A stretch of 64,000 nucleotides of DNA, from positions 66,650,001-66,714,000 of the forward strand of contig NC_042997.1 of NCBI RefSeq assembly GCF_006345805.1, read 5' to 3'. The position numbers and the translations under genes are program-made. Source of the DNA: Octopus sinensis (taxonomy: Eukaryota). Below, in pieces: positions 1 through 57,625 of the stretch (position 1 is its first letter; the number at the start of each line of letters is the position of its first letter). The notes under the pieces were generated by a model. It had not been told where the DNA came from, made no database searches, and saw nothing but the letters and a program-made list of their open reading frames with translations.

Positions 1-2460
1 GAATTAGTCCTCTGCCACCATTCTTTCTTTTCATATAGTCTGTTTACGTTTGCTTTAGTGTGTAGGACCCAATGCAGCATCATCAACTTTCTCATCCTGC
101 TATCCAGTCTTGATATTTCCTCCTTAGTCCATTTGAGGATGGACGCACTGTATCTGACCACCGCAACTGCCCAAATATTCATTGCAGTAATCAATTTTTT
201 TGCATTCAGGTTGGATTTCAACACCATCTTCACCCTTTTTTGATATGCCTTGCTGACCTTGACTTTCATTTTTCTGTGTAGAATGTCATCCAACTCCAAA
301 ATCCCTAAATATCTATACCCACTACCATCAGGTTCATCCATGGTCTATCCTGATGATAACCGCAATCCTCTGCAGGCTGCTTTCTTCTCTCATTTCATAT
401 TAAGTACTGAGCATTTGGTAATCCCAAATTCCATACCAATGTCCCTACCACACTTCTGGACTGTTTTGGTTAAGGAATCTATCTGTTTTTCAGATTTCCC
501 AAACAATTTCAGGTCACCCATAAACAGAAGATGGTTCATGATGGGCCTTTCTTCCCACATCGGTAACGAATCTTAACTTTCCCAAGTGTCATTGTTATGG
601 GTATTAGTGAAATTACAAATAGTAACGGAGAAAACGAGTCACCTTGGAAGATACCCCTTTTAATATTAACTTCTCCAAGGAATACATTACTTGAGTACAA
701 TTTGGTTTTCCACTCTTTCATGCTATATATCAGAAAATTTGTGATGTTGTCAGCAACATCAAACATCTGCAGGCATTCAACGATCCAAGAAAGAGGCATC
801 ATATCATATGCCTTCTTAAAGTCAATCCAAGCCATGTTTGTATGATGTTTTTTATAATGCTTCAAAACTGTTTTATCAATGACCAGGTGATCCTTGGTAC
901 CCCGAGAACTCTTCCTACATCCTTCTAGTACTCTTGGTAGTATTTCTTCCTGCGCCAGGAAAGTGTATGTCTTTGCCACACATATTCCAGTGAGTATCTT
1001 CCAGATTATGTTTAGCATGCTATGGAACAGTACTTTCCCACAGTATTTCCCTTTCTTCTGTCTTTCATTACAAGTGGTGTCCTCCCAGTCACCATACACA
1101 CAGGGACTGTACCTTCCTGGACACACTCATTCAATTGGGCTGCTAGTCTTTCATGCACCGCATGGCATCTCTTCAGCTAGAAGCCATGTATCCCGACTGG
1201 TCTGGGTGCTTTCCAATTAGGCACTTTACCCACTTGTTTCACATCACCCGTGCTTATGACAATATTCCTTTGTTTCTTTCCTTTTATGCACCACATTGTT
1301 TCCCCATAATCTGCTCCAGAACTCCTTGGCTTGAGTTACATCAGGAGTAACATTTTCCCCATTGTCTCCTAATGTTTGGAATAATTGCTTTGGATTATTT
1401 TTGAACAATCTGTTCTCAAACTGCTTCTTTCTGTTCACAAACTTTCTGATCTTCTGGCTTTTTGCCATGATCCTCTGTTTTAACTACTTTATTACTGCAT
1501 CAAACCCGTTCTTCCGTATTTTATATTTCTTCTCTAATTTTTCTCAGTTTGTCTTTTTCCTATTATTCCAGTTTCCTCTTAACCATTGCTCAATCTGTCC
1601 TAGATCTTGCCTTGCCTGCATTATGTCCTTTTCAATGTGTCGTTTCCTCCACGGTTCTTTTGCTCCACCATTTTTTGTTTTCAGATGTAATTTCTCCTCA
1701 ACAAGTAGTGCAATAGCTCGGACAAGATTCCTTGTTTGTGCTATGTCCTCCATCTGGATGTATGGTATGACAGTATTTATCTTTTGTGTTACTTTATTTA
1801 TGATACTCTTATTTACACTTCTCATATTCATAGGGATTTTTTCTTCTGGAGCATTCATCAAGTCGGTGAGTCATCCGTCTTTGAATTTCAAGCAATTCAA
1901 TATCTAGTTGGTTCTTTTCCCCTGCATGTCGACCAACCACAGTATCAGGGTTCACTGTAATAACATTCCTATTCCTCATCCTTAACAGCCCCATCACCAT
2001 TTCCCTGTTCCTCCAGTCTATTCTTCTCCTTGCTTTCAACTCCGACCATCCTTTGTAGCCCATCTGCAGGGTCTCTCAGACTCTCACTAATCCAAGATAT
2101 TTGTACTCCACTTAAGTAACCCTTCCTCCTAATCACTCATTTGGTTCATTAGTTTATTTTCTGACACTGGACACATGTCCTTTTCCATCCAAAATTTCAA
2201 GGTACATTGGCCTACTCCATGACTTCTTTCCAGCTTTCAATAAATGTATCATACTCTTCCTTTGTCCTCTTATGTTTGTTTTTCTGCACACCGTGTATGT
2301 GATCTGCCCTTGATGTGGGTGGTGTTGGACATGCAATTTGGGAAACCTTCACCATGATCAGCTATAGCTTCATTCATGCCGTTAATTCTTTCCTTGTTGT
2401 GTTGCTTCATGATTTCATGAGTCATTCGAGGGGTTCCCGCGAGAGTTGTTATCTCTCTCT
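1..2460 (-). mobile_element. R4/Dong-clade non-LTR retrotransposon, frameshifted, running off the window start
   Basis: Collinear minus-strand ORF pieces: EPWRKRHIEKDI (1544-1861), QFENRLFKNNPKQLF...KEFWSRLW (1244-1468), RT motifs AWIDFKKAYD and RGIFQGDSFSPLLF (536-1126), and the post-RT motif ANVNRLY..K.NGGRGL at 1-60. These match the Dong/R4 ORF layout. Confidence 0.85.
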
Positions 2461-5261: not shown

Positions 5262-7298
5262 ATATATACATACATACACATATATAATATACATACATAG
5301 ACACAGCCATGGCTGTGTAGAAAGAAGTTTGCTCCCCAACAACATGGTTCTGGGTTCAGTCCCACTGTGTGATGTCTTGGGCAACTGTCTTGTACTATGG
5401 CTCCAGACCAACCAAAGCCTTGTGAGTGGACTCCAACAGTGAATCTTAAAACATGAGTCTTCCTACTGTAGGAAGGCTTGATAGCAGTTGATTTATTCCC
5501 ATCCTTCTTAAGTACCCTTCATTTGTTCCCTTAATTACCATCAACTTCAATCCCACTACTGTTCCCTATGCTTACACTTCCAGTCCTTTTATAATTATCT
5601 TTCTTAAAAATAAAAAAAAAATAATAATTGCTTCTCAGTCTTATGTTATTTTCTTCAGATTTACATTTCATAGAGCAGATCATACTCTAGCTTGTGTTGG
5701 GATAGAATCTTCAGTGCTTATATTTCATGATACACTGCACTGCACAAATTATACACTCTCCACTGAGCAAGATTTTTTTAATGGAAATAAAAAATGTTTT
5801 TTGTTATAAACTAAAATAAAAATATTGGTTTCTATTTTTGGCACAAGGCCAGCAATTTTGAGGGAGAGAACAAGTCAATTACATCATCCTCAGAAATCAA
5901 CTGGTACTTATTTTATCAAACCTGAAAGGATAAAAGGAAAAGTCAACCTTGGCAGAATTTGAACTCAGAATGTTAAGATGAATGAAATACCACTAAGCCT
6001 TTTGCCCAACATGCTAATGATTCTGCCAGCTCACTACCCTAACTAAAGTAGAAATAGTAACCAGTGACTGGGCTATTCATAACCCCAATAATAGCACCAA
6101 TGAACAGCTTATATACCAAACTACTCAATACTGCTTGTGAAGAGTCAACAAAGGAGACTCTACAGAGTTTTTTATCTACTAAAAATTGTAGCCATTTCAT
6201 TCCTTACTATCTTACAAAATGGAAATGATGAACACTCATCAAAGATGACATACCAGTGTTCAGCCTTTTCCAAGTGACCTGCACAAATGGTTTGTTTCTA
6301 GTGATCAAATGTATGTGCCTTACATTAGTTCACTCCCTCCATAAAATCGATGTTGCCTGAACAGTTGCACGGTGTACCACACATCAGGTGTTAAAGTAAC
6401 TGCAGAGCAATGTGAGATGGAGTGTTTTGCTCAAGAACACAACTCACCACTCAGTCTAGGAACTGAAATCCTAACCACTTGGCCATGTTTCCTTTCAAAT
6501 GGAAGCACACACTAGATAATGAATAGAAACATATATCAGAAAAGATAAAAAGGAAAAAATAATTATTACAGTTGGAAAGCTTTTAATCATAGAACTGCAT
6601 AATCAAAGCTATCCTGAATAATAGCAATAACATACTGAGTATGACTGTATATTAACAAACTACTCGAGACTACTTTACAGAATATGCTTTTAAATTAAAA
6701 ATATATTCTATAATTAAATATATCTTCAGCCAAAAATTTTATCAGAGTTTTCAGTAAGAACTTGTTCTGTTCCAGATGTTACTATATTACACTAGTAAAC
6801 AAGGATTTGGTATACATTCACTAAGTGCTTCCAAAATCTTGATTATTTTGGAAATTGACTGAAATAAACAGGCAATGTGTCTGTTTCTATGAATATGGTT
6901 TGCAAAAGGTTAAATAAGTCAGAAATATACAGAGTTTAACACGTTGGCAGTTCACTGTTGCTTGAGATAAGGAAACATCTTGAGCAGCAAATTAAGGAGG
7001 AATTTACTGGGCAGTCAACTGAACTATAAGAAATAGCAACTAAATATCCATCAAATGCACAGTCATCACCTTAAAAAGGAAGGGCATATTAAATAATGCC
7101 ATCAATGGCATATTATGCCTGAAAAATAAGCTGGACATAGTGAAATCTAGGATCTGTCGCCAAATCTAGAATCTGTTAGGGTTATCTTTTTAAGATAATA
7201 GATAAACTACACATACATATATATGTGTGTGTGTGTGTGTGAATGTGTCTGTGCGTGAATGTATGTGCATATGTATATGTATGTATATATATATACAT

Positions 7299-7683
7299 CT
7301 TTTATCTTTTACTAGTTTCAGTTATTGGACTGCATCCACACTGAGGAACCACCTTGAAGGTTTAGTTAAACAAATCAACCCCAGTACCTATTTTTTAAAG
7401 CCTTGTATTTATTTTATCAGTGTCTTTTTGCTGAACTGCTATGTTACAGGGATGTAAACAAACCAACATCAGTTGTCAGGTAGTTGCAAAGGACAAATAC
7501 AAATGCAAAGACACACACACACACACACACATACATGGCAGGCTGCTTTCAGTTTCTGACTACCAATCTACTCACAAGGCTTTACCTCAGGGCTATAGTA
7601 GAAGACACTTGTCTGAGGTGCCATGCAGTGGGACTAAACCAGAAACCATGTAAAGCAAACTTCTTACCACACAGCCATGCTTG
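7299..7683 (-). mobile_element. tRNA-derived SINE, family A, near full length
   Basis: Head GGCTGTGTGGTAAGAAG...GGTTCAGTCCCACTGC, internal (GT)n, tail CTGAAAC(A/T)AGTAAAAG. Many other copies in the window (5309, 16601, 18035, 45555, 45850, 51700, 57070, 63440). Confidence 0.8.
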
Positions 7684-10085: not shown

Positions 10086-12340
10086 TCTCATGCAAAAAAC
10101 TGCCTAAACTCAAAGTGCAATTTTAATCAATACGAATAATCAGTTTTGAGATTTATAAAATAATTCACATATAATCAGGTATAAATTAAGTTATCTCCAG
10201 CTCTCGTATATGAAACAACAGCTGAAAATTGGATGTATAAAAGACTTAATCCCTCGGCAGATGCCTCTGCTGGTTACAGAGATCCTTCAACTACATATAG
10301 GTCAATGTAATGCATACAGGGGATGACAATGTAATTTATGTGGTAGAGGATGATTTAACATATACAGTGCAGATCAAAATCATACAAGAAAAGTTCTGTA
10401 ATTATTCAAGATGAAAAATACATTTGTTCTAATGGTGTGAGCAATTATGGAAGTACCATTGACTTTTACAAAGCTCCTAAACTGATGCTGGAGAAGAAAT
10501 AGATTTTCAAGTGCTGCTTTAGTAAGAAGCAGTACATCAAAATATCATATCATTTTCAGACTAGAAAACAATTCTGAATGTTTGCAACAGAGTGGACTAT
10601 ACTAAAAGCACTTCAAAAGGTAATGGACTGGATCTATCACTGAAATCATAGCAAAAAGCTATGAAAGAAATCTTAAACATTACACATCAAGAGTTTCATC
10701 ATAAAATGCATTAAAAATGCACTTAAATCAACAGGTCACATACTTCCCTATAAAATCCAAAATAACTGAAATAAATAAAATAAAATTAGGAGAAAGAGTG
10801 TAGCTAATTTGACTAACCCAATTATTTGAGAGTGTATACTTTCATTATCCCAGAAAAATGAAATACAAAGTCCACCCTGGAGAGATCTGAACTCAAAATG
10901 TAAAGTATTATAATTTGATAATGACAATATGGAGGTTTTTGAATTGGAAGCATACTGGGTGTATAAGTCACTATTCATAGTATTGGGGCAAGATATGAAT
11001 GTCAGAACATATCACTCTTCTCGAACAATATTCAAGGCCTTTCTTTGTGCAAAGAAAACATGTAAATAAAAACATATGCAGCATAGAGACACACATCACC
11101 AACACAAAAGCAATAATAAATCATTCTCAGGTCTAGAAAAAAGAGGTGTGGGAGATGTTAATACCATAAAACTATGTCATTAATAGCAAATTGGTGAGAT
11201 GTTAATCTCAGAGTAAATAATCATCACGCTTTTTATAATACTTTGAGCCTTGTTCTTAAGGATAGCCAAAGGCATTAAAAGGGAGGTAGAAGGAGACATA
11301 GAGAGGATGGGGAATATATATATTTAATTTATAAGAGGAGCAGTATGACTGAATGTTTAAGAAGTTTGCTTCACAACCATGCGGTCCTAGGTTCAATCCG
11401 AGTGCATGGCACCTTGAAGAAATATTTTCTTAAGCCTTGAGTTAGCCCATATGTTGAATGGAATTGGGTACACAGAAACAATATGGAAGCTTGTTAGGTG
11501 GATTGTGTCTGTAATACTATAACACTGAATGTTTGCAACAGAATAGATGATGCTATAAGCATCTCAAAAGCCTTGTCATACACACTGTGCGATGCTGACC
11601 TTGCCTGAGAATTATGTTACGGATACACATTTCAAAGGAATGCTCAGCCTCTTACATGTTTACTCAGGAACAAATCATTCAGTTGATTAAACAACTGAAT
11701 CTTCGCCATTAAATGATACATTTGTGTGTGCATGTGTAATTTGCATAGATCTGCTCTATGAAGATCAGCTTTGAGAAAACAAACCTATGATCAAAAGATA
11801 TTCCAGAAATGACCATCAACTTTATTATGCTTTCTTAGATACTGTTGCATGTACTTCCTATTTTGTCACACATGTCCTTTTCTTTTTTAAGGAAATAAGG
11901 TATGTGTTGAGAGAATTTGGCTGCAGGTTAAGTGACCATGTTGAGACTTGCTCATGTAACAGCTGCACTGAGCATAAAAAGCAAATATTTAAAAGTTTTC
12001 TCATTGCTTCACAGATCACAATCTGGCTGAAAATGTTATTTGAATCAGTAAAACAGTAATTGAGAATACTCGAAACAGATGTATTCCAAGAAAGACTTGG
12101 CATAACATATTTACATCAGGTACTAAAATATGTTCGTTTTAAAATAAAGGAAAAGAGCACTGTAGCAGAATGAAAAGATACACTATTGTAAAGAACTCAT
12201 ACTGTTAATATCTACAGAGATAAATCTGATCATTTCTGTCCTTATTGTCTCATGACAGTGATGTAATCAACCGAACATTTAGTGTAAACCGCTTTGCCTA
12301 ATCATGTGTTAAGGTCATCTCTACAAATTTTCTATAGAAA

Positions 12341-12409
12341 TTATAGCCAGCACTGATTTTGTTATGATGTTTTGTATCCAAGGCATAATAAAATCAGTGC
12401 TGGCTGTAA
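12341..12409. repeat. 26-bp inverted repeat with 17-nt loop (hairpin or mini-MITE)
   Basis: TTATAGCCAGCACTGATTTTGTTATG ... CATAATAAAATCAGTGCTGGCTGTAA; two transition differences between arms. Confidence 0.9.
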
Positions 12410-12931
12410 TTTCTTTAAAAAACCTGTAGAGATGATCTTAACACATGATTTAAGCGCACTGCTAACACAGAAGTACATGGTATCTCTTATTATAAAAGGC
12501 AGATTTTATCTGCCTCCCTTTGGGAGTTATACAAATCTACAATATAGGATTTCTTCAATTACAATTTACCTAGAATTTTTAAGAGTACAATGCATCGCGT
12601 CATGCCAGGTCCAGTTTTTAAAATTTAAACTCCAATTAAGCAAAATTTACAGAAAACTCACATTCTGGTGTGTGTGTGTCAAATGCTTTTATTAGTCTGG
12701 TTTACACCACACGCAAATGCACACACACAGTGGGCAACGAATAAAATAGCGACAGTGATTTGAGGAAGACTAAAGTGAAAGTATTCTGTCTATGACGCTG
12801 ATAGATACATGAGTAAAATGTATGGGAAGCTAAGAGCTAAGAGTGAGTGAAAATGTTCTTGGAAGAGAGTAATTAGTAATAAAGTAAACATACACTCATA
12901 CATACATACATACATACATACATACATACAT

Positions 12932-12964
<33 letters not shown>

Positions 12965-13249
12965 TACCCACACACATACATACACACACACATACATACA
13001 TACACACATACATACATACATACATAATTACATACATACATATACATACATACATACACACACACATACACACACACACAGTATTGAAGCTTGAGAACAA
13101 TCAGATACATTTGCAACACATCTGTTGAAAATATTATTGTTCACACACATACATATACATATAACATACAGACAGACAGACAGATAGACACCACACACAC
13201 ACCCACACACATGATCCAGCATGGCCACAACCTCAAGGCTGAAACATAT

Positions 13250-13625
13250 AAAAATAACAGAATATAAATGTGTGCAAAGTACAAGAAATATTAATGCAGT
13301 ATATGGGGATTGGACAATAAGCGTAAGGCAGTGTCAATGGGGGTTCCAGAAATCCCGAGCCATAAACTACAGCCTAGAAGACGAGCCTCATCCTGAAAGA
13401 TCTGTAGAACTCGACAAGGACATCCTGAAAACCCTGGTGGAACAAAATATCATCGTAACTGTTGAGGAACTAGCAGAGAAGCTTGGATTTGGTCATTCAA
13501 CCATTCATTGACCCTGTGTGCTATCGGAAAAGTCAGCAAATTGGGTCAATGGGTTCCTCACGAACTTTCCGAGTCTAATTGCATGCAGAGAGTGAATGTA
13601 TGCTTTTCTTTGCTGTCATATCTCA
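13250..13625 (+). mobile_element. Mariner transposase N-terminal fragment inside Helitron unit 1 (duplicate at ~14975-15355)
   Basis: RNINAVYGD.TISVRQCQW.F...LEDEPHPERS...LAEKLGFGHSTIH...KLGQWVPHEL; same family as 35810-37026. Confidence 0.9.
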
Positions 13626-13645
13626 CCACTACTGCGCTATGTATA

Positions 13646-14278
13646 TCTATATATATAAAACTGTAGTTGTGTGAGTGTCTGTCCCCTTTGATTTAGATTC
13701 CTAACTACTCCCACATTTTGCGGTACAGTTTAACCAAATTCGGGTAGCTTATAGTCGTGATTCATATCGAGCCCGTCTGAATATTAGCGCGCGTCTACGA
13801 TGAGTCTACGATTTTAAAAATAATTTACATCATTTTTTATTCCATTTTAATGCATAATTTTTCTGTGTCGATGGCGGCGGAGTTGGCGTCCACTCACACC
13901 TGCACCTGTGGGGAAGGGAGTGTAAGGAAATCAACGTCGTAATGCGTTGTCAAGGAGACCAGTGTTCTTTTAGAACAACGACTTCATGGCTTGAAGACAC
14001 CAAAACAGAAATGGCTAAGAAAGCGTCTACATGAGTCTCTACGATTTAAAAAAAAATTTACCATCGTTTTTTTCCATTTTAATGCATTTTTTCGCTATTA
14101 TATAAGGGAAGTAACTCTCTAAAAATGTCTACGATGAGTCAACGATTTAAAAAAAAATTTACCATCATATTTTTTCCATTTTTAATGCATTTTTTGCTAT
14201 TTTTTTGCTATAACTCTCTAAAAATGCTTATATAGTTTTTCCCTTACAAACCCGAGCAACGCCGGGCGATACTGCTAG
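13646..14278 (+). mobile_element. Inner non-autonomous Helitron (duplicate at 15375-16009)
   Basis: A|TCTATATATATAAAACTG 5' end, GTGTCTGTC motif, three internal subrepeats (GTCTACGATGAGTC..ACGATTT..AAAA), 3' hairpin plus CTAG|T. Confidence 0.85.
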
Positions 14279-16009
14279 TCTCTTATTATAAAAGGCAGAT
14301 TTTATCTGCCTCCCTTTGGGAGTTATACAAATCTACAATATAGAATTTCTTCAATTACAATTTACCTAGCATTTTTAAGAGTACAATGCATCGCGTCATG
14401 CCAGGTCCAGTTTTTAAAATTTAAACTCCAATTAAGCAAAATTTACAGAAAACTCACATTCTGGTGTGTGTGTCAAATGCTTTTATTAGTCTGGTTTACA
14501 CCACACGCAAACGCACACACACAGTGGGCAACGAATAAAATGAAAGTAAATAGCGACAGAGTGATTTGAGGAAGACTAAACTGAAAGTATTCTGTCTATG
14601 ACGCTGATAGATACATGAGTAAAATGTATGGGAAGCTAAGAGCTAAGAGTGAAAATAGCGAGAGAGAGAGTGATTTGAGGAAGACTTTCATTAAATAACC
14701 GTAGTGGCTTGTGTTAGTAATAAAGTAAACACACTCATACATACATACATACATACATACATACATACACACACACACATACATACACACACACATACAT
14801 ACACACACAGTATTGAAGCTTGAGAACAATCAGATACTTTGCAACACATCTGTTGAATATTATTGTTCACACACATACATATACATATATACATAGACAG
14901 ACAGACAGATAGACACACACACACACACACACACACACATGATCCAGCATGGCCACAACCAAGGCTGAAACATATAAAAGAATAACAGAATATAAATGTG
15001 TGCAAAGTACAAGAAATATTAATGCAGTATATGGGGATTGGACAATAAGCGTAAGGCAGTGTCAATGGTGGTTCCAGAAATCCCGAGCCATAAACTACAG
15101 CCTAGAAGACGAGCCTCATCCTGAAAGATCTGTAGAACTCGACAAGGACATCCTGAAAACCCTGGTGGAACAAAATATCATCGTAACTGTTGAGGAACTA
15201 GCAGAGAAGCTTGGATTTGGTCATTCAACCATTCATTGACACCTGTGTGCTATCGGAAAAGTCAGCAAATTGGGTCAATGGGTTCCTCACGAACTTTCCG
15301 AGTCTAATTGCATGCAGAGAGTGAATGTATGCTTTTCTTTGCTGTCACATCTCACCACTACTGCGCTATGTATATCTATATATATAAAACTGTAGTTGTG
15401 TGAGTGTCTGTCCCCTTCGATTTAGATTCTTAACTACTCCCACATTTTGCGGTGCAGTTTAACCAAATTCGGGTAGCTTATAGTCGTGATTCATATCGAG
15501 CCCGTCTGAATATTAGCGCGCGTCTACGATGAGTCTACGATTTTAAAAATAATTTACATCATTTTTTATTCCATTTTAATGCATATTTTTCGTGTGTCGA
15601 TGGCGGCGGAGTTGGCGTCCACGCTCACACCTGCACCTGTGGGGAAGGGAGTGTAAGGAAATCAACGTCGTAATGCGTTGTCAAGGAGACCAGTGTTCTT
15701 TTAGAACAACGACTTCATGGCTTGAAGGCAACCAAACAGAAATGGCTAAGAAAGCGTCTACATGAGTCTACGATTTAAAAAAAAATTTACCATCGTTTTT
15801 TTCCCATTTTAATGCATTTTTTCGCTATTATATAAGGGAAGTAACTCTCTAAAAATGTCTACGATGAGTCAACGATTTAAAAAAAAATTTACCATCATAT
15901 TTTTTCCATTTTTAATGCATTTTTTGCTATTTTTTTGCTATAACTCTCTAAAAATGCTTATATAGTTATTTCCCTTACAAACCCGAGCAACGCCGGGCGA
16001 TACTGCTAG
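14279..16009 (+). mobile_element. Composite Helitron, unit 2 of the tandem dimer (1731 bp)
   Basis: Begins TCTCTTATTATAAAA directly after the CTAG of unit 1; ends CTAG at 16009 followed by T; near-identical to unit 1 apart from microsatellite lengths, scattered substitutions and indels. Confidence 0.8.
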
Positions 16010-16600
16010 TTGACTTATAAAAATGTTTAATATACTTTGTAGCATGTTATGTTTGCATAACAAAATACCGTGTGCCTACAAGGCATTAATCTTTGTCTAA
16101 TGAAGCAAGAAAGGAGCTTCTTAGTGCTCACTCAGCCTACTGGAAACAGCAACTAAACAACACTCAAACATCTTAAAAGTGAAGGGTATATTATAGCCTG
16201 GAAATACACTGTCTGGAAAAAAAAATGTCAAGATGATGCCAATGGATCCTTGATTAATAGATACCTCTGATCAAAGGTTTGCTTGTTTAAGAGCTAAACA
16301 CCAATAAAACACCTTACTCATCTGGCAATTCAGATATTCCAGCTTTCATGGGACGTTATGCATACTGCCATAAAAGCTAACACAAGAACTTCAGTGTAGT
16401 CAATCAAGCTACTTCACATACAAGCCAAAATTTCCTTAAATATCTTTATGACATTCTCCTGAAATATGAAACACATGGGAAAATATCTAAAGATAAATAT
16501 ATTGAGAATTGATGTTGTTTCGCTCCGGCTCAACACAGATCCACTTGACCAGCGGTTCTCAAACTTACTTTGATACAAAATTCATTCTTTTATCTTTCAC

Positions 16601-16814
16601 CTTTTACTTGTTTCAGTCATTAGACTGTGGCCATGCTGGGGCACCACCTTGAAGAATTTTTAGTTGAATGAATTGACTGCAGAACTTATTTTTCTTTAAG
16701 CCTGGTACTTAGTCTATTGATTCCTTTTGTTGAACTGCTAAGTTACAGGGACATAAATATACCAACACTTGTCAAGCGATGGTAGGGGACAAATACAGAA
16801 ACAATTACACATAC

Positions 16815-16870
<56 letters not shown>

Positions 16871-17018
16871 CAGGCTTCTTTCAGCTTCCATCTACCAAAT
16901 CCACTCAGAAGGCTGGTTATAGTAGAAGACACCTGCCCAAGGTACCATGCAGTAAGACTGAACTTGGAACCATGTGGTTGGGCAGCAAGCTTCTTACTAC
17001 ACAGCCACACCTGTGCCT
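16601..17018 (-). mobile_element. SINE family A copy
   Basis: Head, internal (TA)n and tail all recognisable. Confidence 0.8.
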
Positions 17019-17853: not shown

Positions 17854-18474
17854 CCCTTCAGTATTTAAACCAGCCATATCTGGCTCAAATATTCTACCTG
17901 CTTTATGTTCAAACAGTCCAGATCTGTCTCTCACACTTACCCTACAATGTCATTCTAAAAATAAACAGTTACATCATAAAAATTTTGAAGCTATGAGATA
18001 ATACATGATTAATTCAAAATAATGTGAATAAATATAGGCACAGGCATGGCTGTGTAGTAAGAAGCTTGCTTCCCAACTACATGATTCTGGGTTCAGTCCC
18101 ACAGCATGGCACCTTGAGGAAGTATCTTCTACTATAGCCTTAGGCCAACCAAAGCCTTGTGAGTGGATTTGGTAGGCAGAAACTGAAAGAAGCACATCTT
18201 ATAGATGTATATACTTGTGTGTTTGTGTTTGTCCCCACCCCCACCCAATCGTCACTTGACAACTGATCTTGGTTCGTTTACATCCCTGTAACTTACCAGT
18301 TCAGCAAAAGAGATCAATAGAATAAGTACTAGGCTTACAAAGAGTAAGTCCTGGGTTCTATTTCTTTGACTAAAACCCCTTAAGGTGGTGCTCCAGTATG
18401 GCCACAGTCAAATGACTAAAACAAGTAAAAGAATAAGTATTACACTTGACAAGAGTAACCTAAAAGCTGAAGGG
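17854..18474 (+). mobile_element. piggyBac-like MITE with a nested family A SINE (18035-18437)
   Basis: TTAA|CCCTTCAG ... CTGAAGGG|TTAA termini; an uninterrupted opposite-strand relative lies at 21924-22114. Confidence 0.75.
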
Positions 18475-22636: not shown

Positions 22637-23942
22637 AAATGCTGAATTATACTTGCTACAATTTATTATGTACTTGAAGAATATATATTACACATTCCAC
22701 ATTTGAGTAGAGTTAAGAAGGATATAAATATATGTTTGGGCCAATGAATGAATGAGTTACTACAATAATGGTAGAAGAGGTACTATGAGTGAAGTGGTAC
22801 AATGAGTGAAGTGGTACTATGAAATCAGGCCCTGTCACCAGACTTTAGCATGTTGGAGTGTTTCAAAATATTCTGAGTGGGCACTAATTTGTAATAATGC
22901 TGAAGTGGAGTTTTGAAATAAGTGAATCACTGAAAATCTAAGGGTGCACCATTGAATAGACAGGGAGAACAGTGCCCTCCAGTGTATCCCCCACTTAGCA
23001 ATGGCCATGTATGAGGTGATGGGAGAGGATATACACAATAAAGAATACACATGGTTCTCACAAGTGAGGTAACATAGGATCAAGATGCACTGGAAGTTAA
23101 GAAATTGCAGACCCATCTAACCTACATTAGCACAGAGAAAAAACCAAATATCACAGTAATAATGATAATGCCAATGTTATTGCTACTGTTGTTAGTCTAT
23201 GATCAAAAGCCTTCTAGTTGTGACCATCACATCTTTTAATCAAATACAGTGCATCCGAGACCAAATTACCAAAACCATTCTTCTTTAAGACAGAAGGGTG
23301 TGATTTGAGGGAGGTTTAGCTGCTTTCTATTGTAGCTCAGAAGACTGTGTAGAGTCTGTGTAGAGTCAGTAGTGATCGTCATATAATCATTATTGTAAGT
23401 TTCCCTCCCAATTCAAAGCTGAATAGATTTGTAACACTTTAGCTCTCATAAGGTCTATCTTAAGTGCATATATATATTTGGTCTATCTCCAAATTAAGTT
23501 AGACCAACAGCAAATAACCACATACTATACTCCCTATAATGCACATTTAGTTTCAGTTTAACTTCTGTATTTTCCCAGGCAATTAAATACACATCATAAT
23601 TAATTTTTCACTGCAGTTTTATCAGCCAAATCTTATCACATGTTCCGAATTCCACAAAATTTACATTCAAAGAAAGAATCATTTAATCATTTCAAAGGTT
23701 AAAAGTATTGCTACTGGTATATTCCTTTATCAAAGCATTGTATTCATGCAACACTAAAACAAAATTTTACATTCAACACAAGGCAAATATGACAATAAAA
23801 ACAATGCATTTTTATTGTGTGTGTGTGTGTGTGTGTGTACTTTTTTGGGGGGTTTTGTTTCAGACACATTTTTGTATCAGGGTAAGGATGAGAGGTGGAG
23901 GGAGAGTATTGTTAGGAATTTTAAAAATATGTTTCTACATAC

Positions 23943-24109
23943 GTCTGAATGGCATTCAAACCAGCAGCTTTCATTTTAGACAATCTGTCGTGCCAATAGT
24001 AGTTAGGTGTACGGAAGTAATGCATACTGCCAGACACATATCTAAATGGCTTGCCATCTTTAACAAAGGTGTTGTGCTCGTAATCGATTGTAAATGAACG
24101 ATTTGATGA
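23943..24109 (-). CDS. GLB1: Beta-galactosidase (GH35, GLB1-type) exon 2
   Basis: 167 nt, ttgtctcgttttag| ... |gtatgt. Translates [55 protein letters not shown](T), matching human GLB1 exon 2 (FEIDY...KDGQPFRYISGSIHY.R....[16 protein letters not shown]) including the phase-0 start and phase-2 end. Confidence 0.97.
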
Positions 24110-26285: not shown

Positions 26286-26813
26286 ATTCACATTGGAAAC
26301 AGAGTTTACTCTGTAGTACAGTTACCACTTACTTCTCACTCAGATATTTAAAACTGTTTTCCGCTTTGTTGTGTGTGTGTGTGTGCGCGCGTTTGTTTTT
26401 GTGTCTGTGTTTGTCCCACCACTACTTGACAACTAGTGTTGATGTGTTTACTTCCTTGTAACTTAACGATTTGACAAAAAGAAACCAATAGAATAAGCAT
26501 CAGGCCTACAAAATAAGTACTGGAGTTAATTCATTCAACTAAAAATTCCAAGTCGTATCCCAGCATGGCTACAGTCTAATGACTGAAACAAGTAAAAGAT
26601 ATAATTATATATATAGTTACTCCAAACATAAACAAAGAGAAAACACAACAACGCGAGGATGTGGAACAAGTATAGTGTTAGTGGATACTCAGGGAAGGAA
26701 AGAAAGAAGGAGGACTTAACGTTTCGAGCAGAGCTCTTTATCAGGAACATAGAAAAAGGAAAAGTCCAAGGAAGGGAAGACGGAGAAAGAAAATCGCCAA
26801 CGATACACGATTA

Positions 26814-26859
<46 letters not shown>

Positions 26860-27247
26860 CATCATCATCATCATTTAGTGTCTGTTTTTCATGTTACTAT
26901 GGATAAGACAGTTTGACTGGTGCTGGCAAGCCAGAGTTGCACCAGATTCCAGTCTGCACCAACTTAGTTTCTAAAACTGGATACCCTTCTTAATAGCAAC
27001 TACTCCACAGAGTGTACTGGGTACCTGTCACATGTCATTAGCATGGGTGCCTTTTACATGTCACCAGAACAAGTACCTTCTTCATGTCACTGGTACAGGT
27101 GCCTTTTATATGTCACCAAAATGGGTGCATTAATGTGTCACTGGTATAGGTGCTTTTTGTGTGTCACTGACACAGGTGCCTTCTATATGTCTCTGGCAGG
27201 TGTCTACTGGCAAAGGGTCTTTTATATGTCACCATACATACGTATAT

Positions 27248-27347
27248 NNNNNNNNNNNNNNNNNNNNNNNNNNNNNNNNNNNNNNNNNNNNNNNNNNNNN
27301 NNNNNNNNNNNNNNNNNNNNNNNNNNNNNNNNNNNNNNNNNNNNNNN
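27248..27347. other. Assembly gap (100 N)
   Basis: Run of N between an RTE-tail VNTR and a (TA)n array. Confidence 1.
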
Positions 27348-29527
<2,180 letters not shown>

Positions 29528-32500
29528 TTGATTGATTGATTGATTCCAGTTTCAGCTCATGAGCTGTGGCCATGCTGGGGCACCGCCATTTGGTGTTGCT
29601 ACTTGGTTTCACTTCATGGAGGCTTTCTAGCAACTGCTATTTGGTGCATGAGAGAGTTCGATGCAGCTGCCCTCATCTGCCCCTCCTGCCGTGAAGTTGG
29701 TTCATCTGGGACACCTGACAGGAAGAGATCCAGCTCCATTTTAAAGACATCTGTATCCACCCCATGCAGGTCTCTCAGGTTCATCGGGAGGATATTGAAG
29801 AGCTGTGGGCCTCGGAAGCCCAGGCTATCACAGAATCTTGTCCTACATCTTGATGGCAAGTTTGGAGTCCTAGGCACCACGCAGTGGCGCCCAGTTCTGG
29901 CGTTTTCGTAACTCTCGATGCCAAGTTCAGGACACTTCCCTCCAGGATTTCCAGATGTATATTATGGCATATCTTTCCCGCCTACGCTCCAGGGAATATA
30001 ATTTTAATCTCTTGAGTCTTTCCCAGTAGCTTACATTCTGCATAGAGGCTATCTTCTTCGTGTAGCTTCGTTGGATCGCCTCAAGTTCTGTGATCAACTT
30101 GACACTGGATGGTGACCATAGCTGAGAGCAATAGTCAAAGTGACTTAGGACAAGTGTCTTCCAGAGGACCATCATGTTTCTTGTTCTCTTGTTCTAAAGG
30201 TTTCTAAGAATCCATCCAGCCAGGCGTCTGCATTTCACTGTCAGTTTAGCAACATGTACATGAAAGGTCGCGTCATCACTCATGTGAATACCCAGGTCAC
30301 GCACTGATTGTGCCTCTGGGATTGCAATCCCTCCGGGTCCAGTGTATTCCTTGGGTATTGCATTTAATTTTTGCATGCTGATAGTATAAAGCTTGAAACT
30401 TTTCAGCATTGAACTGCATGCTATTCTTTTCAGCCCACTTGTATATTTCGTCCAGCTCATATTGCAGGTGCCTAGTGTCTTCAGGGTTCTGTATTGCCTG
30501 TGAAACTTTTGTATCATCTGCATAACTTGTGATCGTGGCTCTCCGCGTGGCTGAGGGCATGTCTGAGAGGGCCATTATGAACAGTAGTGGTCCCAAAACA
30601 GTGCCCTGTGAAACACCGCTCACTATTTGCGTGCTAATGGAAGTGGCCCCATTGGCTACTACCACCTGACTTCTATTCTTCAGAAAGTCGTGAAGCCATT
30701 CTCCTAGTTTTCCAACTATGCCAAGATCACGCAGTTTGTGACATATCATTCCATGATCGACTTTATCGAAGGCCTTTGCGAAGTCGAGATATATGACTTC
30801 CACATTTGAGTGGTTGAGCAGTTGTTTCAGCACCCAGTCATAGTGCTGCAGGAGCTGAGTTAAGCAGCTTCTCTTCCTGGTCGGAAACCATGTTGGTGTC
30901 AGGCAGCAAGTCATTTTCTTCAAGGAAGGTGATTAGTTTCCTTCTGACTATTCGTTCCATGACCTTGCTGATGTGTGAGGTCAGAGAGATACGTCTGTAG
31001 TTCTTGGCCTCCGCTCTGCTACCTCCTTTATGAATAGGGCATATTTTTACCTTCCTTCAGTTTTCTTGGAAGTTTGCCAGCTGCAAGGAAGCTCTGAAAG
31101 AGGAACTGCAGTGGTCTTGCTAAGACTCTCTTACATACTTTTAGGAGGATTGCGGGAATCCATCGGGGCCAATAGCTGAGTCTATTTTCATTTCATCTAT
31201 AGCCTTTATTACATCATCTTCCTTATATCGATGTAATTTAACGTCGCCGCCTCTGATTCTATATCTGCAATGGTAAAAAAGTCAGTTGGATTGCTGATTT
31301 GGAAATGCCCAAGGGGTGGAGTGAAAACACTCTTGAATTGTTCATTCAGTATTTCACTTACCCTCATTGGTTTTCCTGTGAGTGTGCCATCCTTTTCAAG
31401 GAGTGGCCCTATCCTACAGTGCACCGTAGCTGTTTCTTTGGCATACCTGTAGAAAGCTCTGGGGTTAGTTTTTATGTTGTCTATAGCCCAGGCTTCTTTG
31501 TCTGCTCTTTCCTTCTCATGGGAGAGTTGCAGACAATTTTCAATTTCCAACAGTTTTATTTTCAGGCGGGACTTTTCACTGCTTTCAATTTGTTTGTTTA
31601 GGCGATTTGAGATTTTGTGCGCCGTCTCATTAAAATTTTTCTCTCTCTGGGGATTTTGTTCTTGTGTACAGTGGCCTTTCTCTCTGGGACACATTTGTAG
31701 CATATGGCTTGCATTACAGACATGAATTGTTGAAGTATCATGTCGATGTCCGGCGAGGAGAGACATTCAGGCCAGTTTTGTTTGAGGATCTCTTTCTCAA
31801 TTTGTTTCCAGTTTGCCTTATTGAAGTTCAAGCTGGAAAGACTCTGAGGGTTTCTTGTAGGCTGCATGTCCGTGCTCTCTTTTGGCCCGTACATGGTCAG
31901 CTCTACCATGTTGTGATCCGAGAGTAGTGTCGGTGTCACTTTCACATTATGGATGAGATCCATATTATTTGTGAGCAGAGATCCAGTGTGTTACCCCTCT
32001 GGTTGGTTGGAGTATTACTTGCTCCATGTACAGGTGTTGGTGAGGTTCAGGAGGGACCTCGCCTGTCCTCGTTCACATCTTGTCATTCCTGGGAGAGAAA
32101 GGCCCTCGGGCCATCTGACATTCGGTAGATTGAAGTCTCCCATGAGAAGTACACTTATGTGTTGTTCTAATGTGGTTAGAACTTCTTCTATTTTTAAAAG
32201 GCAGTCCTCAAACTTTGCCCATATGACTTGGGGCATCTGGAGGGCGATATGTAGCACACACAACTACATCAAGTTGCCTTATGTGTACAATTAGTGTGTC
32301 ACACACCGAGTTTGAGTATGACAAAAGGACCTGGGGTGAGGTCCCCACGGATGTACATAGCAACTCCTCCATGACTTCTTTCTTTCCTGTCGGTCCTAGT
32401 ACAACATACTGTGGTATGTGTAATTCCGCATCTGCTATGTCCGGTTTCAGATGCGTTTCTGTGAGTGCTATGCATAAGGCTTGATTGCATGCGACAAAGT

Positions 32501-32534
32501 CTCTCAGGAACGGGACTTTTTGGCATTTTATCTG
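29528..32534 (-). mobile_element. CR1-clade LINE, nearly complete ORF2 (APE endonuclease plus RT), frameshifted
   Basis: [84 protein letters not shown]; (TCAA)n tail at 29528. Confidence 0.93.
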
Positions 32535-32561
32535 ATATATATATATATATACGTACATATA

Positions 32562-32599
<38 letters not shown>

Positions 32600-32602
32600 A
32601 AC

Positions 32603-32679
<77 letters not shown>

Positions 32680-32785
32680 TACATATATATATACATACAT
32701 ATATATACATATATACATATATATATACATACATATATACATATATATATATATACATATATATATACATACATATATACATACA

Positions 32786-32837
<52 letters not shown>

Positions 32838-33008
32838 AATATATATATACATATATACATATATACATACATACATATATACATACATACATACATATAT
32901 ATATATATACATACATACATATATACATACATACATACATATACATACATACATATATACATACATACATATATATATACATACATACATATATACATAC
33001 ATACATAT

Positions 33009-33039
<31 letters not shown>

Positions 33040-33156
33040 CATACATACATATATACATACATACATATATACATACATACATATATACATACATACATAC
33101 ATATATACATATATACATATATATATATACATATATATACATATATATATATATAC

Positions 33157-33253
<97 letters not shown>

Positions 33254-33411
33254 TATATATATATATATATACATACATATATATATATATATACATACAT
33301 ATATATATACATACATATATATATACATACATATATATATACATACATATATATATACATACATATATATATACATACATATATATATACATACATATAT
33401 ATATACATACA

Positions 33412-33451
<40 letters not shown>

Positions 33452-33496
33452 CATACATATATATATACATACATATATATATACATACATATATAT

Positions 33497-33563
<67 letters not shown>
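32535..33563. repeat. ~1 kb compound (TA)n/(TACA)n microsatellite
   Basis: Direct reading. Confidence 0.95.
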
Positions 33564-33566
<3 letters not shown>

Positions 33567-33851
33567 AACCTTTACATAAATAAATAACATGAAATATACG
33601 AAGGGACAAACAAAAAGACAAACGGGTCATTCAAAGCCTTCATTCTTCAGTCAGAAACTGATCCCTCATCGCAGACTTCGGCTACAAATGAGTGTAACAG
33701 TAGAGATCCAGGTGTCACTACATACACTGCATGAATAGCATTTGGTTGGTACTTCTGCACCAAGTTTGATATTTACATATATTGCTGTGTATGCATGTTA
33801 TTTCAACCCAAGGAGGTTGAAATTTAAGAACCTAATTCAACTGAACCTTAG

Positions 33852-34951: not shown

Positions 34952-35797
34952 CAGGGTACATTGAATATATTATCGTCTAAATTACACAAAAATGACAATG
35001 ACACTGACATCTCATTTTAACAGATATATTTACCAAAATTACTTTAAAATATCTTGAAATACTAAAGAGTAAATTTATACAATAAAATTGCCATACTATT
35101 TTCAACCACGGCCTCCAGATGACTTTGGAATCCCCTGCAACTCTTCTGGTGAATGCTGCCTTAATCCTTGCTTTCAGTTCATCTTTGGTGTTGCAAAAAG
35201 TTTTGTTGGTCTCTCGCTCAACTTCACCTCACGCATAATAATCAAGGGGTTTACAGTCTGGGAAGTTAGGTGGCCAGATGTTAGGGTTGGTGTGGTCACA
35301 GAAATTGTCTGACCGCCATAGCTGGGTTCTCCTGCTTGTGTGGCATGGCGTAGAGTCCTGTTGCTAGACATAGGGTCTTCCAGCAGCCACCCTCTTAAGC
35401 CAGGGCAACACTACCTCCTCCAGGCACTTGAAATAGGCCTCCATGTTCAGTCTGAGGCTGTGTGAGAAGATGAATGGAAGCATAATGTCACCATCACTAG
35501 TGATCACTCCAAACACAATGATGTTGACTGGATGCTTGATTTTTATAGTACATGCACTATCCTCAGATTGGCACCCAAACACTCTGAAATGTTCATATTG
35601 GAGCATCTGATGTGACTGCCAAGCAGTAGAGCATGTCGTTTCCAAAGTTCTGGCAGAGTGAATTGTGTTATGGTGTTGTTTTTCCACAGACAGTGATCAA
35701 CTGACCCTACTATACTGTGTAGACAACAAAATCAAAAGCAATGCGCATGTGCAAAATTAAAAGTATAAAATAGTGATAAGTTACCCATCACACCCTG
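34952..35797 (-). mobile_element. Tc1/mariner maT-like element, internally deleted
   Basis: CAGGGT...CCCTG termini; VFGVITSDG, VAAGRPYV, WPPNFPDCKPLDY motifs; second copy at 42064-42928. Confidence 0.75.
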
Positions 35798-35809
35798 CAT
35801 ATATATATA

Positions 35810-37020
35810 TTGGGTCACCCCATATATAATGCAGTATTTTTATACTCCTTTTATTTTTCAAAATTAAGATAAAGTTCTTTTTTAATCTATAATATACTCT
35901 CCATTTTCTACAATGCTCTTCCATCTAACAGGTAAACTTGCAAGGCCCCTCTTCCAAAATTCACTTGTCTGTGATGAAAAATATTCCTCCAGTACTTTTC
36001 TGACCTCATCTACAGAATTCATATTTTTTCAATTCAAATGATTTTGAAGACTGTGGAATAAATGATAATCAGATGGGGCAATGTCGAACTGCTCCAACTT
36101 TTGGAATGTCATTCTCATTGTATGTGGCTGAGCATTATCCTGATGGAAGAACACCTTCTGTCTTGAAACCAAAGATGGTTGTTTTTCTTCTAACACCAAC
36201 TTAACCTGTTTAAGCTGCTCACAGTAGATCTCATTTGTTAGTGTTTGCTTTGGATTTAAAAGTTCAAAGTGAACTAAACCTTTCATATCCCACCTAACAG
36301 AAAACAACACCTTATGTGGGTGAAGACCTTCTCTAGCCTGAGGTATCGGTGTTCCTCCTTTCCCTACCCACTGTCTTCAGTGCTTGACATTTTTATAGAG
36401 GACCCATTTCTCATCACAAGTCACTATTCAGTCCAAAAAAGGTTCATTTGTGAGACGTGACAGCAAAGAAGAGCACACATTCACTCTCTGCATGCAATTA
36501 GACTCAGAAAGTTTATGAGGAACCCATCGACTCAATTTGCTGACTTTTCCGATGGCACGCAAGCATCAATGAATCCAAGCTTCCCTGTTAGTTCCTCAAT
36601 AGTTACAATGGGATTTTGTTCCACCAGGGTTTGCAGGATGTCCTTGTGCTCTATAGATCTTCCAGGACAAGGCTCATCTTCTAGGCTGTTGTTTCCAGCT
36701 CAGAATTTCTGGAACCACCATTGACACTGGCTTATGTTTATTGTCCAATCCTCATATACTGTATTAATATTCCTTGCACTTTCCATTGCACTGTTGCCTT
36801 TATTGAACTCATAAAGCAAAAAATGCCGAATATGTTCCTGTGTCACTTCCATTATAGCTTTGAAAAAATAACTGTTAAAATCAAACTGCACTCATCAAAA
36901 CTTGAATAAGAACAAGGTAAAATTACTACATGCTTTCATAGCAAGTTGATGCCGGTAGTTTCCTATCCCCCTCTGACTTTTAGTTCATGCAATTGAAAAA
37001 ATGGCATTATCTATGGGATG

Positions 37021-51699: not shown

Positions 51700-52097
51700 A
51701 CTCTTTTTTACTTGTTTCAGTCATTTGACTGTGGCCATGCTGGAGCACCGTCTTTAGTCGAGCAAATCGACCCCAAGACTTATTCTTTGTAAGCCTAGTA
51801 CTTATTCTATCGGTCCTTTTGCTGAACCGCTAAGAATCGGGGACATAAGCACACCACCATCGGTTGTCAAGCGATGTTAGGGGGACAAACACAAGACATA
51901 CAAACATATACACACACACATACACATATATACGACAGGCTTCCTTCAGTTTCCGTTTACCAAATCCACTCACAAGGCTTTGGTCGGCCTGAGGCTATTG
52001 TAGAAGACACTTGCCCAATGTGTCACACAGTGGGAATGAACCCAGAACCATGTGGTCGGTAAACAAGTTACTTACCACACAGCCACTCCTGCACCTA
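51700..52097 (-). mobile_element. Young, full-length family A SINE
   Basis: Complete head to tail with many CpGs retained. Confidence 0.85.
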
Positions 52098-56831: not shown

Positions 56832-57625
56832 CAGTGGTTCTCAACTGGGGTCCATATAAGATTTTTGAGGGTCCATGTAACAAAATAGTAAACTGGTAAA
56901 CTGGGGACCTGCAATAGTATTTTAAGGGCCCTGAAAAAATTTAGTTTTAGGTGTATGTATCAGTATGAATTGTAAGAAACAGCTACGCTTCTTTATCTAA
57001 CATTTTACTTAGTTCAACCTACACAAGTTAATGTGTGTAAAACAAAATAGGAATTTTGAAAGAAGTTTTCAGGAGTGGCTGTGTGGTAAGTAGCTTGCTT
57101 ACCAACCACATGGTTCCTGGTTCAGTCCCAATGCATGGCACTTTGGGCAAGTGTCTTCTACTATAGCCTCAGGTCAACCAAAGCCTTGTGAGTGGATTTG
57201 GTAGACGGAAGCTGAAAGAAGCCCGTCATATATATGTATATATATATGTGTGTGTGTGTGTTTGTGTGTCTGTGTTTGTCCCCCCAACATTGCTTGACAA
57301 CCAATGCTGATGTGTTTACGTCCCCCATAACATGGCAGTTCAGCAAAAGAGACCGATAGAATAAGTACTAGGCTTACAAAGAATAAGTCCTGGGGTCAAT
57401 TTGCTCGACTAAAGGCGGTGCTCCAGCATGGCAGCAGTCAAAATGACTGAAACAAGTAAAAGAGTAAGAGTAAAAGAGTTTTTAAACATCAAATGGCTAT
57501 GGAGGTCCACCAGAATAAAATAGTAATCAAAGGGGTCCACAGGTAAAAAAATGGTTGAGAAAAAAATTGAGGAAAATGGTTGAGAAAAAATAGTAAACAA
57601 AGGGGTCCATGGGTAAAAAATGGTT
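56832..57625. mobile_element. hAT/Charlie-like MITE with a nested family A SINE (57070-57479)
   Basis: CAGTGGTTCTCAAC left end; duplicated, degenerate GGTTGAGAA right-end motifs. Confidence 0.6.

What the first reader, a model, noticed from the sequence alone, without database searches (positions are those of the whole stretch)
12483..16009. Exact head-to-tail dimer of a Helitron: signature of rolling-circle amplification
Seen: the duplication breakpoints coincide to the base with Helitron termini. Left flank A|TC (12482/12483), internal junction CTAG|TC (14278/14279), right flank CTAG|T (16009/16010), no target-site duplication, and each unit ends in a GC hairpin 8 nt before CTAG. Established: Helitrons insert between A and T, have TC...CTRR ends, and form circle-junction and tandem products. 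An assembly or haplotype artefact would not be expected to break exactly at both termini. The units also differ by substitutions and one replaced block (about 12855-12875 versus 14657-14715), suggesting real divergence. Inference: a two-round rolling-circle insertion in GLB1 intron 2.
Basis: partly seen in the sequence, partly recalled or inferred. Interest (0 to 1): 0.8.

Follow-up and report, generated by a model that had tools for sequence, protein, structure and literature searches.

The report
Head-to-tail Helitron dimer in an intron
Two copies of a small non-coding rolling-circle transposon (Helitron) sit end to end with a seamless junction inside a long intron of a beta-galactosidase-like gene; the arrangement is real in the sequence, but it is a kind already described in bats, maize and flies, and it does not by itself show how the pair formed.

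Summary
Unit 1 is 12483-14278 (1796 nt) and unit 2 is 14279-16009 (1731 nt). The flanks and junction read A|TC, CTAG|TC and CTAG|T. There is no target-site duplication and no terminal inverted repeat. A bulged GC hairpin ends 8 nt before each CTAG. Random duplication boundaries would show these contexts about once in 10,000 cases.

"Exact" applies only to the junction. The units differ by 13 substitutions and 7 small indels in 1,237 non-repetitive positions (JC 0.0106). They also differ by a 67-nt microsatellite length change, a 12-nt indel and one replaced block.

Each unit is non-autonomous. It carries a 355-nt internal piece of a mariner transposase gene, a SINE scrap, microsatellite and three 3' subrepeats. 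It has no Rep/helicase.

All structural hallmarks of a canonical Helitron are met. Family copies and an empty site could not be found in any collection available here.

Seamless Helitron head-to-tail junctions are already described. The literature also offers a second origin: insertion of a second copy at the end of a resident one. Nothing here separates that origin from a two-unit rolling-circle product. This is a new member of a known kind, of low interest.

The parts
12482..12482 (+). Host A immediately 5' of the dimer
   Evidence: Direct reading.
12483..14278 (+). Helitron unit 1 (1796 nt), TC...CTAG
   Evidence: It aligns over its full length with unit 2.
14279..16009 (+). Helitron unit 2 (1731 nt), TC...CTAG
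14275..14280 (+). Seamless head-to-tail junction CTAG|TC, with no host base between the units
16010..16010 (+). Host T immediately 3' of the dimer
12497..12515 (+). 5' subterminal hairpin AGGCAGAT-TTT-ATCTGCCT of unit 1. The same hairpin is at 14293-14311 in unit 2.
   Evidence: -7.4 to -7.9 kcal/mol, z -3.1.
14251..14266 (+). 3' subterminal GC hairpin of unit 1 (6 GC pairs, one bulge, loop AAC), 8 nt before CTAG
15982..15997 (+). 3' subterminal GC hairpin of unit 2, identical to that of unit 1
12888..13078 (+). (ACAT)n/(AC)n microsatellite inside unit 1. The unit 2 counterpart at 14729-14809 is 67 nt shorter.
12847..12880 (+). Divergent block of unit 1. The unit 2 counterpart at 14653-14722 is longer and repeats the motif AAATAGCGA..AGTGATTTGAGGAAGACT found 109 nt upstream.
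   Evidence: (D12).
13273..13626 (+). Internal fragment of a mariner-like transposase gene (HTH_48 region, with stops, no inverted terminal repeat) carried in unit 1
   Evidence: 83% identity to the mariner copy at 36450-36785 on the minus strand. Pfam HTH_48 on the unit 2 copy.
15001..15355 (+). The same mariner fragment in unit 2
   Evidence: PF17906, E 3.7e-07. Homologues carry PF17906.
13800..14194 (+). Three roughly 60-90-nt subrepeats (GTCTACGATGAGTCTACGATTT-A(n)-TTTACC...CCATTTTAATGCAT) in the 3' third of unit 1. The same three are at 15529-15924 in unit 2.
   Evidence: (D5).
23939..24100 (-). Context: an exon of a GLB1-like (Glyco_hydro_35) gene on the opposite strand. The dimer lies 7.9 kb into the following intron, antisense to the gene.
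   Evidence: translation; all hits carry PF01301.

Best explanation
This is a genuine head-to-tail dimer of a non-autonomous canonical (HLE1-type) Helitron. It occupies one A|T site, antisense, in a long intron of a GLB1-like gene. Its junction was made by Helitron transposase chemistry, not by general duplication.

The most likely route is that two units entered as one piece. Strand displacement started at a 5' TC end, ran past the first 3' terminator (hairpin plus CTAG), and stopped at the next identical terminator. That happens when the donor is a circular intermediate with joined ends, or is already a tandem copy. The product was pasted between host A and T.

The pair then aged in place. 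It accumulated about 1% substitutions, small indels, microsatellite length change and a local rearrangement in the low-complexity 5' third.

Shown: the anatomy and the seamless junction. Inferred: that the element is mobile and has a family, the one-event origin, and the order of later changes.
For: - Termini and flanks are exact: A|TC, CTAG|TC, CTAG|T, with no target-site duplication and no inverted termini.
- The chance of such boundaries for an arbitrary tandem duplication is about 1e-4. The hairpin adds a further factor of about 0.04.
- Both units have the same orientation and the same family architecture: mariner piece, SINE scrap, microsatellite and three subrepeats.
- They are 98.9% identical in non-repetitive sequence and identical over the first 65 and last 42 nt.
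- Helraiser makes covalently closed circles with a precise end-to-end junction. Head-to-tail junctions and tandem Helitron arrays are reported in bat and plant genomes (PMC5876387) and on a Drosophila pseudoobscura Y chromosome (PMC9248874).
Against: - No other copy of the element, no empty site and no reads could be examined. The window has no other copy of either terminus. Public collections gave nothing.
- The units were not identical when sequenced. The replaced block and the 12-nt indel are more than simple point decay, and could mean that the two units came from different source copies.
- The few differences that can be polarised against the independent mariner copy or the internal subrepeats are mostly derived in unit 1: about 3 to 1. 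That is not significant, but it is not the symmetry a one-event origin predicts.
- The 3' hairpin is weak.
Confidence: 0.45

Rival explanations
1. Two successive insertions of closely related family members. A second copy was pasted either between the host A and the 5' T of the resident copy (a canonical A|T target, making unit 1 the newcomer), or at the resident's 3' CTAG|T cleavage site (making unit 2 the newcomer). The resident ends are the very sites the transposase nicks, so they could be preferred targets.
For: - Du et al. 2008 set out exactly this alternative. They showed by PCR across maize lines that two adjacent, unrelated Helitrons with a G/T junction arose by consecutive insertions (PMC2267711).
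- The units here differ by structural changes, a replaced block and a 12-nt indel, on top of about 1% substitutions.
- The polarisable differences are skewed towards unit 1.
Against: - The skew is not significant.
- The structural differences lie in a repeat-rich, slippage-prone part and can have arisen in place.
- Hitting one particular dinucleotide requires strong end-targeting, which was not tested here.
- The right flank does not resemble the element's 5' end more than 3-21% of other A|T sites do, so there is no sign of 5'-end-like target preference.
Confidence: 0.3
2. A single Helitron inserted, and the host later duplicated it in tandem by replication slippage, end joining or unequal exchange, without any transposase.
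For: Tandem duplications of 1-2 kb are common. There is one base of microhomology, T at 12483 and at 16010 (D14).
Against: The duplication would have to start and stop exactly at the element's two ends. The boundary contexts alone have a chance of about 1e-4. There is no homology between the left flank and the element's 3' end to drive unequal exchange.
Confidence: 0.07
3. Assembly artefact. Two alleles of one heterozygous insertion, or a collapsed or expanded repeat, were laid down in tandem.
For: About 1% divergence plus microsatellite length differences is the range of allelic variation in many marine invertebrates (general knowledge). The scaffold has a 100-N gap at 27248-27347.
Against: The gap is 11 kb away. 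No flanking sequence is duplicated. A CTAG|TC join needs reads that contain it. Allelic mis-joins would carry flank sequence between the copies.
Confidence: 0.05
4. Not a Helitron. It is a two-unit stretch of another repeat, such as a long-period satellite or a tyrosine-recombinase or other circle-forming element, whose ends merely look like TC...CTAG.
For: Structure-only Helitron calls have a high false-positive rate (PMC11417382). There is no family, no empty site and no Rep/helicase in the window.
Against: Five independent hallmarks coincide with the repeat boundaries: 5' TC, 3' CTAG, the subterminal hairpin, the flanking A and T, and the absence of a target-site duplication or inverted termini. 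The patchwork interior is typical of non-autonomous Helitrons.
Confidence: 0.05

Closest known systems
Perfect head-to-tail Helitron junctions and tandem arrays: Helibat in Myotis lucifugus (Pritham and Feschotte 2007, as cited in PMC2267711, PMC5876387 and PMC9248874); Helitron-1_DPe arrays on the Drosophila pseudoobscura Y chromosome (PMC9248874)
   Same: Same-family copies in the same orientation, with CTAG joined directly to TC and no host base between. The outer flanks are A and T.
   Different: There are only two units here. They are about 1% diverged and structurally different in one segment. The element is a short non-autonomous one in an invertebrate intron. No genome-wide count of junctions was possible.
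[quoted passage not shown] 2008, PMC2267711)
   Same: The same G/T junction (CTAG|TC) at the join and the same outer A...T flanks.
   Different: The maize pair are unrelated elements with different captured genes, shown to be separate insertions. Here the units are one family, nearly identical.
Helraiser circular intermediate with a precise end-to-end junction (PMC5876387)
   Same: The internal junction of the dimer has the same structure as the circle junction: 3' end joined to 5' end.
   Different: That junction is on an extrachromosomal circle in cell culture. Here it is chromosomal, and no circle was observed.
Helentron/HLE2 non-autonomous elements carrying satellite-like arrays in oyster (PMC7492417)
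   Same: A mollusc-type host (if the host guess is right), rolling-circle elements and tandem repeats.
   Different: Those arrays are short internal repeats inside HLE2 elements, which have inverted termini and insert at T|T. Here whole HLE1-type elements are repeated, at an A|T site, without inverted termini.

Membership tests
Canonical Helitron (HLE1) | 5' terminus TC | tested here: met
   12483-12484 and 14279-14280 are TC. Definition from PMC11417382 and PMC2267711.
Canonical Helitron (HLE1) | 3' terminus CTRR | tested here: met
   CTAG at 14275-14278 and 16006-16009.
Canonical Helitron (HLE1) | Short hairpin 10-15 nt upstream of the 3' end | tested here: met
   A 16-nt bulged GC hairpin ends 12 nt from the 3' end. 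It is weak (-4.5 kcal/mol, z -0.5) but in the best 3.6% of CTRR|T sites in the window.
Canonical Helitron (HLE1) | Insertion between host A and T without target-site duplication | tested here: inconclusive
   The flanks are A (12482) and T (16010), with no duplicated flank. No empty site could be found, either orthologous or paralogous.
Canonical Helitron (HLE1) | No terminal inverted repeats | tested here: met
   No inverted repeat joins the two ends. The termini were read directly.
Canonical Helitron (HLE1) | Multi-copy family whose copies end at the same bases, sharing ends with a Rep/helicase-encoding partner | not testable with these tools
   The host genome is not in any collection available here. 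No other copy is in the window. No Rep/helicase ORF was seen among the ORFs checked in the unit or window.
Helitron2/Helentron (HLE2) | 12-16-nt terminal inverted repeats and insertion between T and T | tested here: not met
   The flanks are A and T, and there are no inverted termini. Definition from PMC11417382.
Helitron head-to-tail tandem (Pritham-Feschotte type junction) | 3' CTRR of one copy abuts 5' TC of the next with no host nucleotide between, copies of one family | tested here: met
   CTAG|TC at 14278|14279. The units align end to end.
One-event rolling-circle concatemer | Units identical at birth: all differences private to one unit, and both units always present together | not testable with these tools
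   This needs family copies, other haplotypes or sister species. The polarisation possible inside the window is too thin: about 3 differences derived in unit 1 against 1 in unit 2.
Ordinary segmental tandem duplication | Breakpoints unrelated to element ends | tested here: not met
   The breakpoints coincide with TC and CTAG and with flanking A and T. The chance is about 1e-4.

The most novel reading that the evidence does not exclude
The pair is itself a mobile composite: a two-unit Helitron whose internal terminator is regularly bypassed. In that case the differences between the units pre-date this insertion, and the same dimer, with the same unit-specific variants, occurs at other sites in the genome. 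That would be a natural record of terminator read-through creating a new, longer Helitron family. It would also point to recently active Helitrons in this (probably cephalopod) lineage.
Probability: 0.12. Interest if true: 0.4.

Novelty: new member of a known kind. Interest (0 to 1): 0.2.

Why it matters
Seamless Helitron dimers are one of the few genomic footprints that bear on how eukaryotic rolling-circle transposition ends and restarts. A well-resolved pair with diagnostic differences between its units could, with the rest of the genome in hand, separate concatemer integration from end-targeted reinsertion. As it stands, this is one more example of a described arrangement. It lies deep in an intron, antisense to the gene, and no effect on the gene is evident.

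Tried and rejected
- **Other copies in the window.** BLAST of the whole unit and of its four parts, and mismatch-tolerant searches with both termini, found only the independent mariner copy and SINE or microsatellite scraps.
- **Public DNA collections.** A 3' end 22-mer and a 5' end 24-mer gave no match in metagenome contigs or prokaryotic genome contigs. The 3' 22-mer also gave none in viral contigs.
- **Protein route to other loci.**
  - The ORF spanning the left flank and the 5' end is not on record.
  - The mariner-derived ORF has no relative above 76% identity.
  - The GLB1 exon has no hit above 91%, and that hit has no contig.
  - So neither this species nor a close relative is available, and no orthologous empty site could be fetched.
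- **Paralogous empty site.** The joined flanks match nothing else in the window except the downstream SINE and the flank's own palindrome at 12300-12450.
- **Does the right flank mimic the element's 5' end?** This would hint at end-like target choice. The similarity is not significant: 3-21% of A|T sites score as well.
- **Internal 5'-end-like site.** A|TCTATATATATAAAAC at 13646 and 15375 lies where the mariner homology stops. It matches the real 5' end at 11 of 18 bases, but 25 of 1783 A|TC sites do as well, so this is only a weak hint of a chimeric origin.
- **Polarising the differences between units.** The mariner copy and the internal subrepeats were used as outgroups. Too few sites were informative.
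- **RNA genes.** Rfam and tRNA scans of 12000-16900 found nothing above threshold. There were only hairpin- or microsatellite-driven miRNA-like scores far below the gathering cut-offs.
- **Literature.** A search for the SINE core sequence, to name the host, found no paper. Pritham and Feschotte 2007 is not held and is cited second-hand.

Full report
**What is in the sequence**

Reading 12300-16200, the repeat finder and a global alignment agree. A 1796-nt unit (12483-14278) is followed directly by a 1731-nt copy (14279-16009).

- The left flank ends in A (12482).
- Each unit begins TCTCTTATTATAAAAGG and ends GATACTGCTAG.
- The internal join is CTAG|TC with nothing between.
- The right flank begins with T (16010).
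- No flank sequence is duplicated and the two ends are not inverted repeats.
- The repeat phase is ambiguous by the single T at 16010 (D14). That is what a host T next to an element starting with T would give.

**Is it more than chance?**

In this window the context A|TC has frequency 0.015 and CTRR|T has frequency 0.0038. An arbitrary tandem duplication would therefore show both with probability about 1e-4, counting both orientations.

The subterminal hairpin CCCG(A)GC-AAC-GCCGGG lies at 14251-14266 and 15982-15997. By itself it is weak: -4.5 kcal/mol, no better than shuffles. It is nevertheless among the best 3.6% of the 443 CTRR|T sites in the window that could be folded.

A stronger hairpin sits 15-33 nt from each 5' end (12497-12515; z -3.1).

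**The dimer is not exact**

- In the 1,237 positions outside low-complexity sequence there are 13 mismatches (JC 0.0106) and 7 indel events. The first 65 and last 42 nt are identical.
- The (ACAT)n tract is 67 nt longer in unit 1.
- Unit 2 has 12 extra bases at 14548-14559.
- The block 12847-12880 of unit 1 is replaced in unit 2 by a longer block, 14653-14722. That block repeats a motif lying 109 nt upstream.

**Anatomy of a unit**

1. A unique 5' part of about 180 nt.
2. A repeat-rich stretch with microsatellite.
3. A 38-nt scrap of the window's abundant SINE-like family, in reverse orientation.
4. A 355-nt internal piece of a mariner-type transposase gene. It covers the HTH_48 region, carries stops and a frameshift, and has no mariner end. 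It is 83% identical to a decayed mariner copy at 36450-36785 on the other strand.
5. A 3' part of about 640 nt with three related 60-90-nt subrepeats and the terminal hairpin.

Rep/helicase is absent from the ORFs of the unit and from the larger ORFs of the window that were checked. Those gave only reverse transcriptase and mariner domains. No RNA gene is carried. This is the patchwork expected of a non-autonomous Helitron.

**Context**

A GLB1-like exon (Glyco_hydro_35) lies on the minus strand at about 24100-23939. No later GLB1 exon was found at lower coordinates. The dimer therefore sits 7.9 kb into an intron of at least 24 kb, antisense to the gene.

The host is not identified. The SINE-like repeat and microsatellite load remind me of octopus genomes (memory only). 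A literature search for the SINE core found nothing.

**Membership**

The defining features of canonical (HLE1) Helitrons are 5' TC, 3' CTRR, a hairpin 10-15 nt from the 3' end, insertion between A and T without duplication, and no inverted termini (PMC2267711, PMC11417382). All that can be read from one locus are met.

The HLE2/Helentron definition (inverted termini, T|T target) is not met.

What could not be tested is the evidence that makes a Helitron call secure: other copies ending at the same bases, an empty site, and an autonomous partner.

- The window has no other copy.
- The metagenome and prokaryotic collections hold neither terminus, and the viral collection does not hold the 3' one.
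- The protein collections contain neither this species nor a close relative.

**How the pair arose**

General duplication is very unlikely given the boundaries. A haplotype or assembly artefact would be expected to carry flank sequence between the copies, and the only gap is 11 kb away.

That leaves transposase chemistry, with two routes already in the literature.

- **One event.** Helraiser forms closed circles with a precise 3'-to-5' junction. Head-to-tail junctions and tandem arrays in bats, plants and a Drosophila Y chromosome are read as rolling-circle products (PMC5876387, PMC9248874). Read-through of the first terminator on a circular or tandem donor gives exactly this structure.
- **Two events.** Du et al. 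2008 noted that a second Helitron inserted between the host A and the resident's 5' T, or at the resident's 3' G|T, also gives a seamless junction. They demonstrated consecutive insertion for two unrelated maize Helitrons.

Both routes fit the data here.

- About 1% divergence says only that both units are fairly young. If the host is an octopus, and the calibration of PMC13282606 applies (JC 0.09 to consensus is about 25 My), the age is on the order of 1-2 My. That estimate is conditional and rough.
- The structural differences lie in slippage-prone sequence and can have arisen in place.
- Differences that can be polarised against the mariner copy or the subrepeats are about 3 derived in unit 1 to 1 in unit 2. 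This is not significant.

I favour the one-event route (0.45) over sequential insertion (0.30), mainly because same-family seamless tandems are recurrent in other genomes. This is a prior, not a result from this window.

**Verdict**

The specific claim of a two-round rolling-circle insertion is plausible but not shown, and "exact" is wrong for the units. The arrangement is a known kind, so this is one more member. Interest is low unless genome-wide analysis shows the dimer is itself mobile or that the family habitually forms arrays.

Noticed in passing
window 12300-12450: A 151-nt near-perfect palindrome (67-nt arms, 90% complementary, 17-nt spacer) ends 32 nt to the left of the Helitron insertion site. 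It is single-copy in the window and draws only sub-threshold miRNA-like Rfam scores (best 36.8 bits against a cut-off of 74). It could be a MITE-like or foldback element.
   Followed up: partly
window about 35360-36790, minus strand: A decayed mariner-like element (Transposase_1 domain at 36029-36310, HTH region at 36450-36785). It is the closest relative in the window, at 83%, of the fragment carried inside each Helitron unit.
   Followed up: partly
window 13646 and 15375: An internal site, A|TCTATATATATAAAAC, resembles the element's real 5' end (11 of 18 bases). It lies just where the mariner homology stops. The unit might be a chimera of an older, shorter Helitron of about 635 nt and a newer 5' part. 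The match is weak: 25 of 1783 A|TC sites do as well.
   Followed up: partly
window 16600-16800; also 7297-7501, 18244-18431, 26399-26598, 51706-51893, 57265-57477: A SINE-like family of about 200 nt has at least eight copies in the window at 74-80% identity (the core reads ...TTTCAGTCATTAGACTGTGGCCATGCTGG...). At least the 16600-16800 copy runs into a microsatellite. A 38-nt scrap of it lies inverted inside each Helitron unit.
   Followed up: no
window 27000-29600 and 32200-33600: Kilobase-scale TA/CA-rich microsatellite tracts. A 100-N scaffold gap at 27248-27347 lies inside the first one.
   Followed up: no
window 536-1126 (-), 30297-30923 (-): Reverse-transcriptase (RVT_1) fragments of non-LTR retrotransposons. 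The intron is largely made of transposon debris.
   Followed up: no
window 23939-24100, minus strand: A GLB1-like exon. The closest protein in the public collection is only 91% identical and has no contig, so the host species and its close relatives are absent from the searchable collections.
   Followed up: partly
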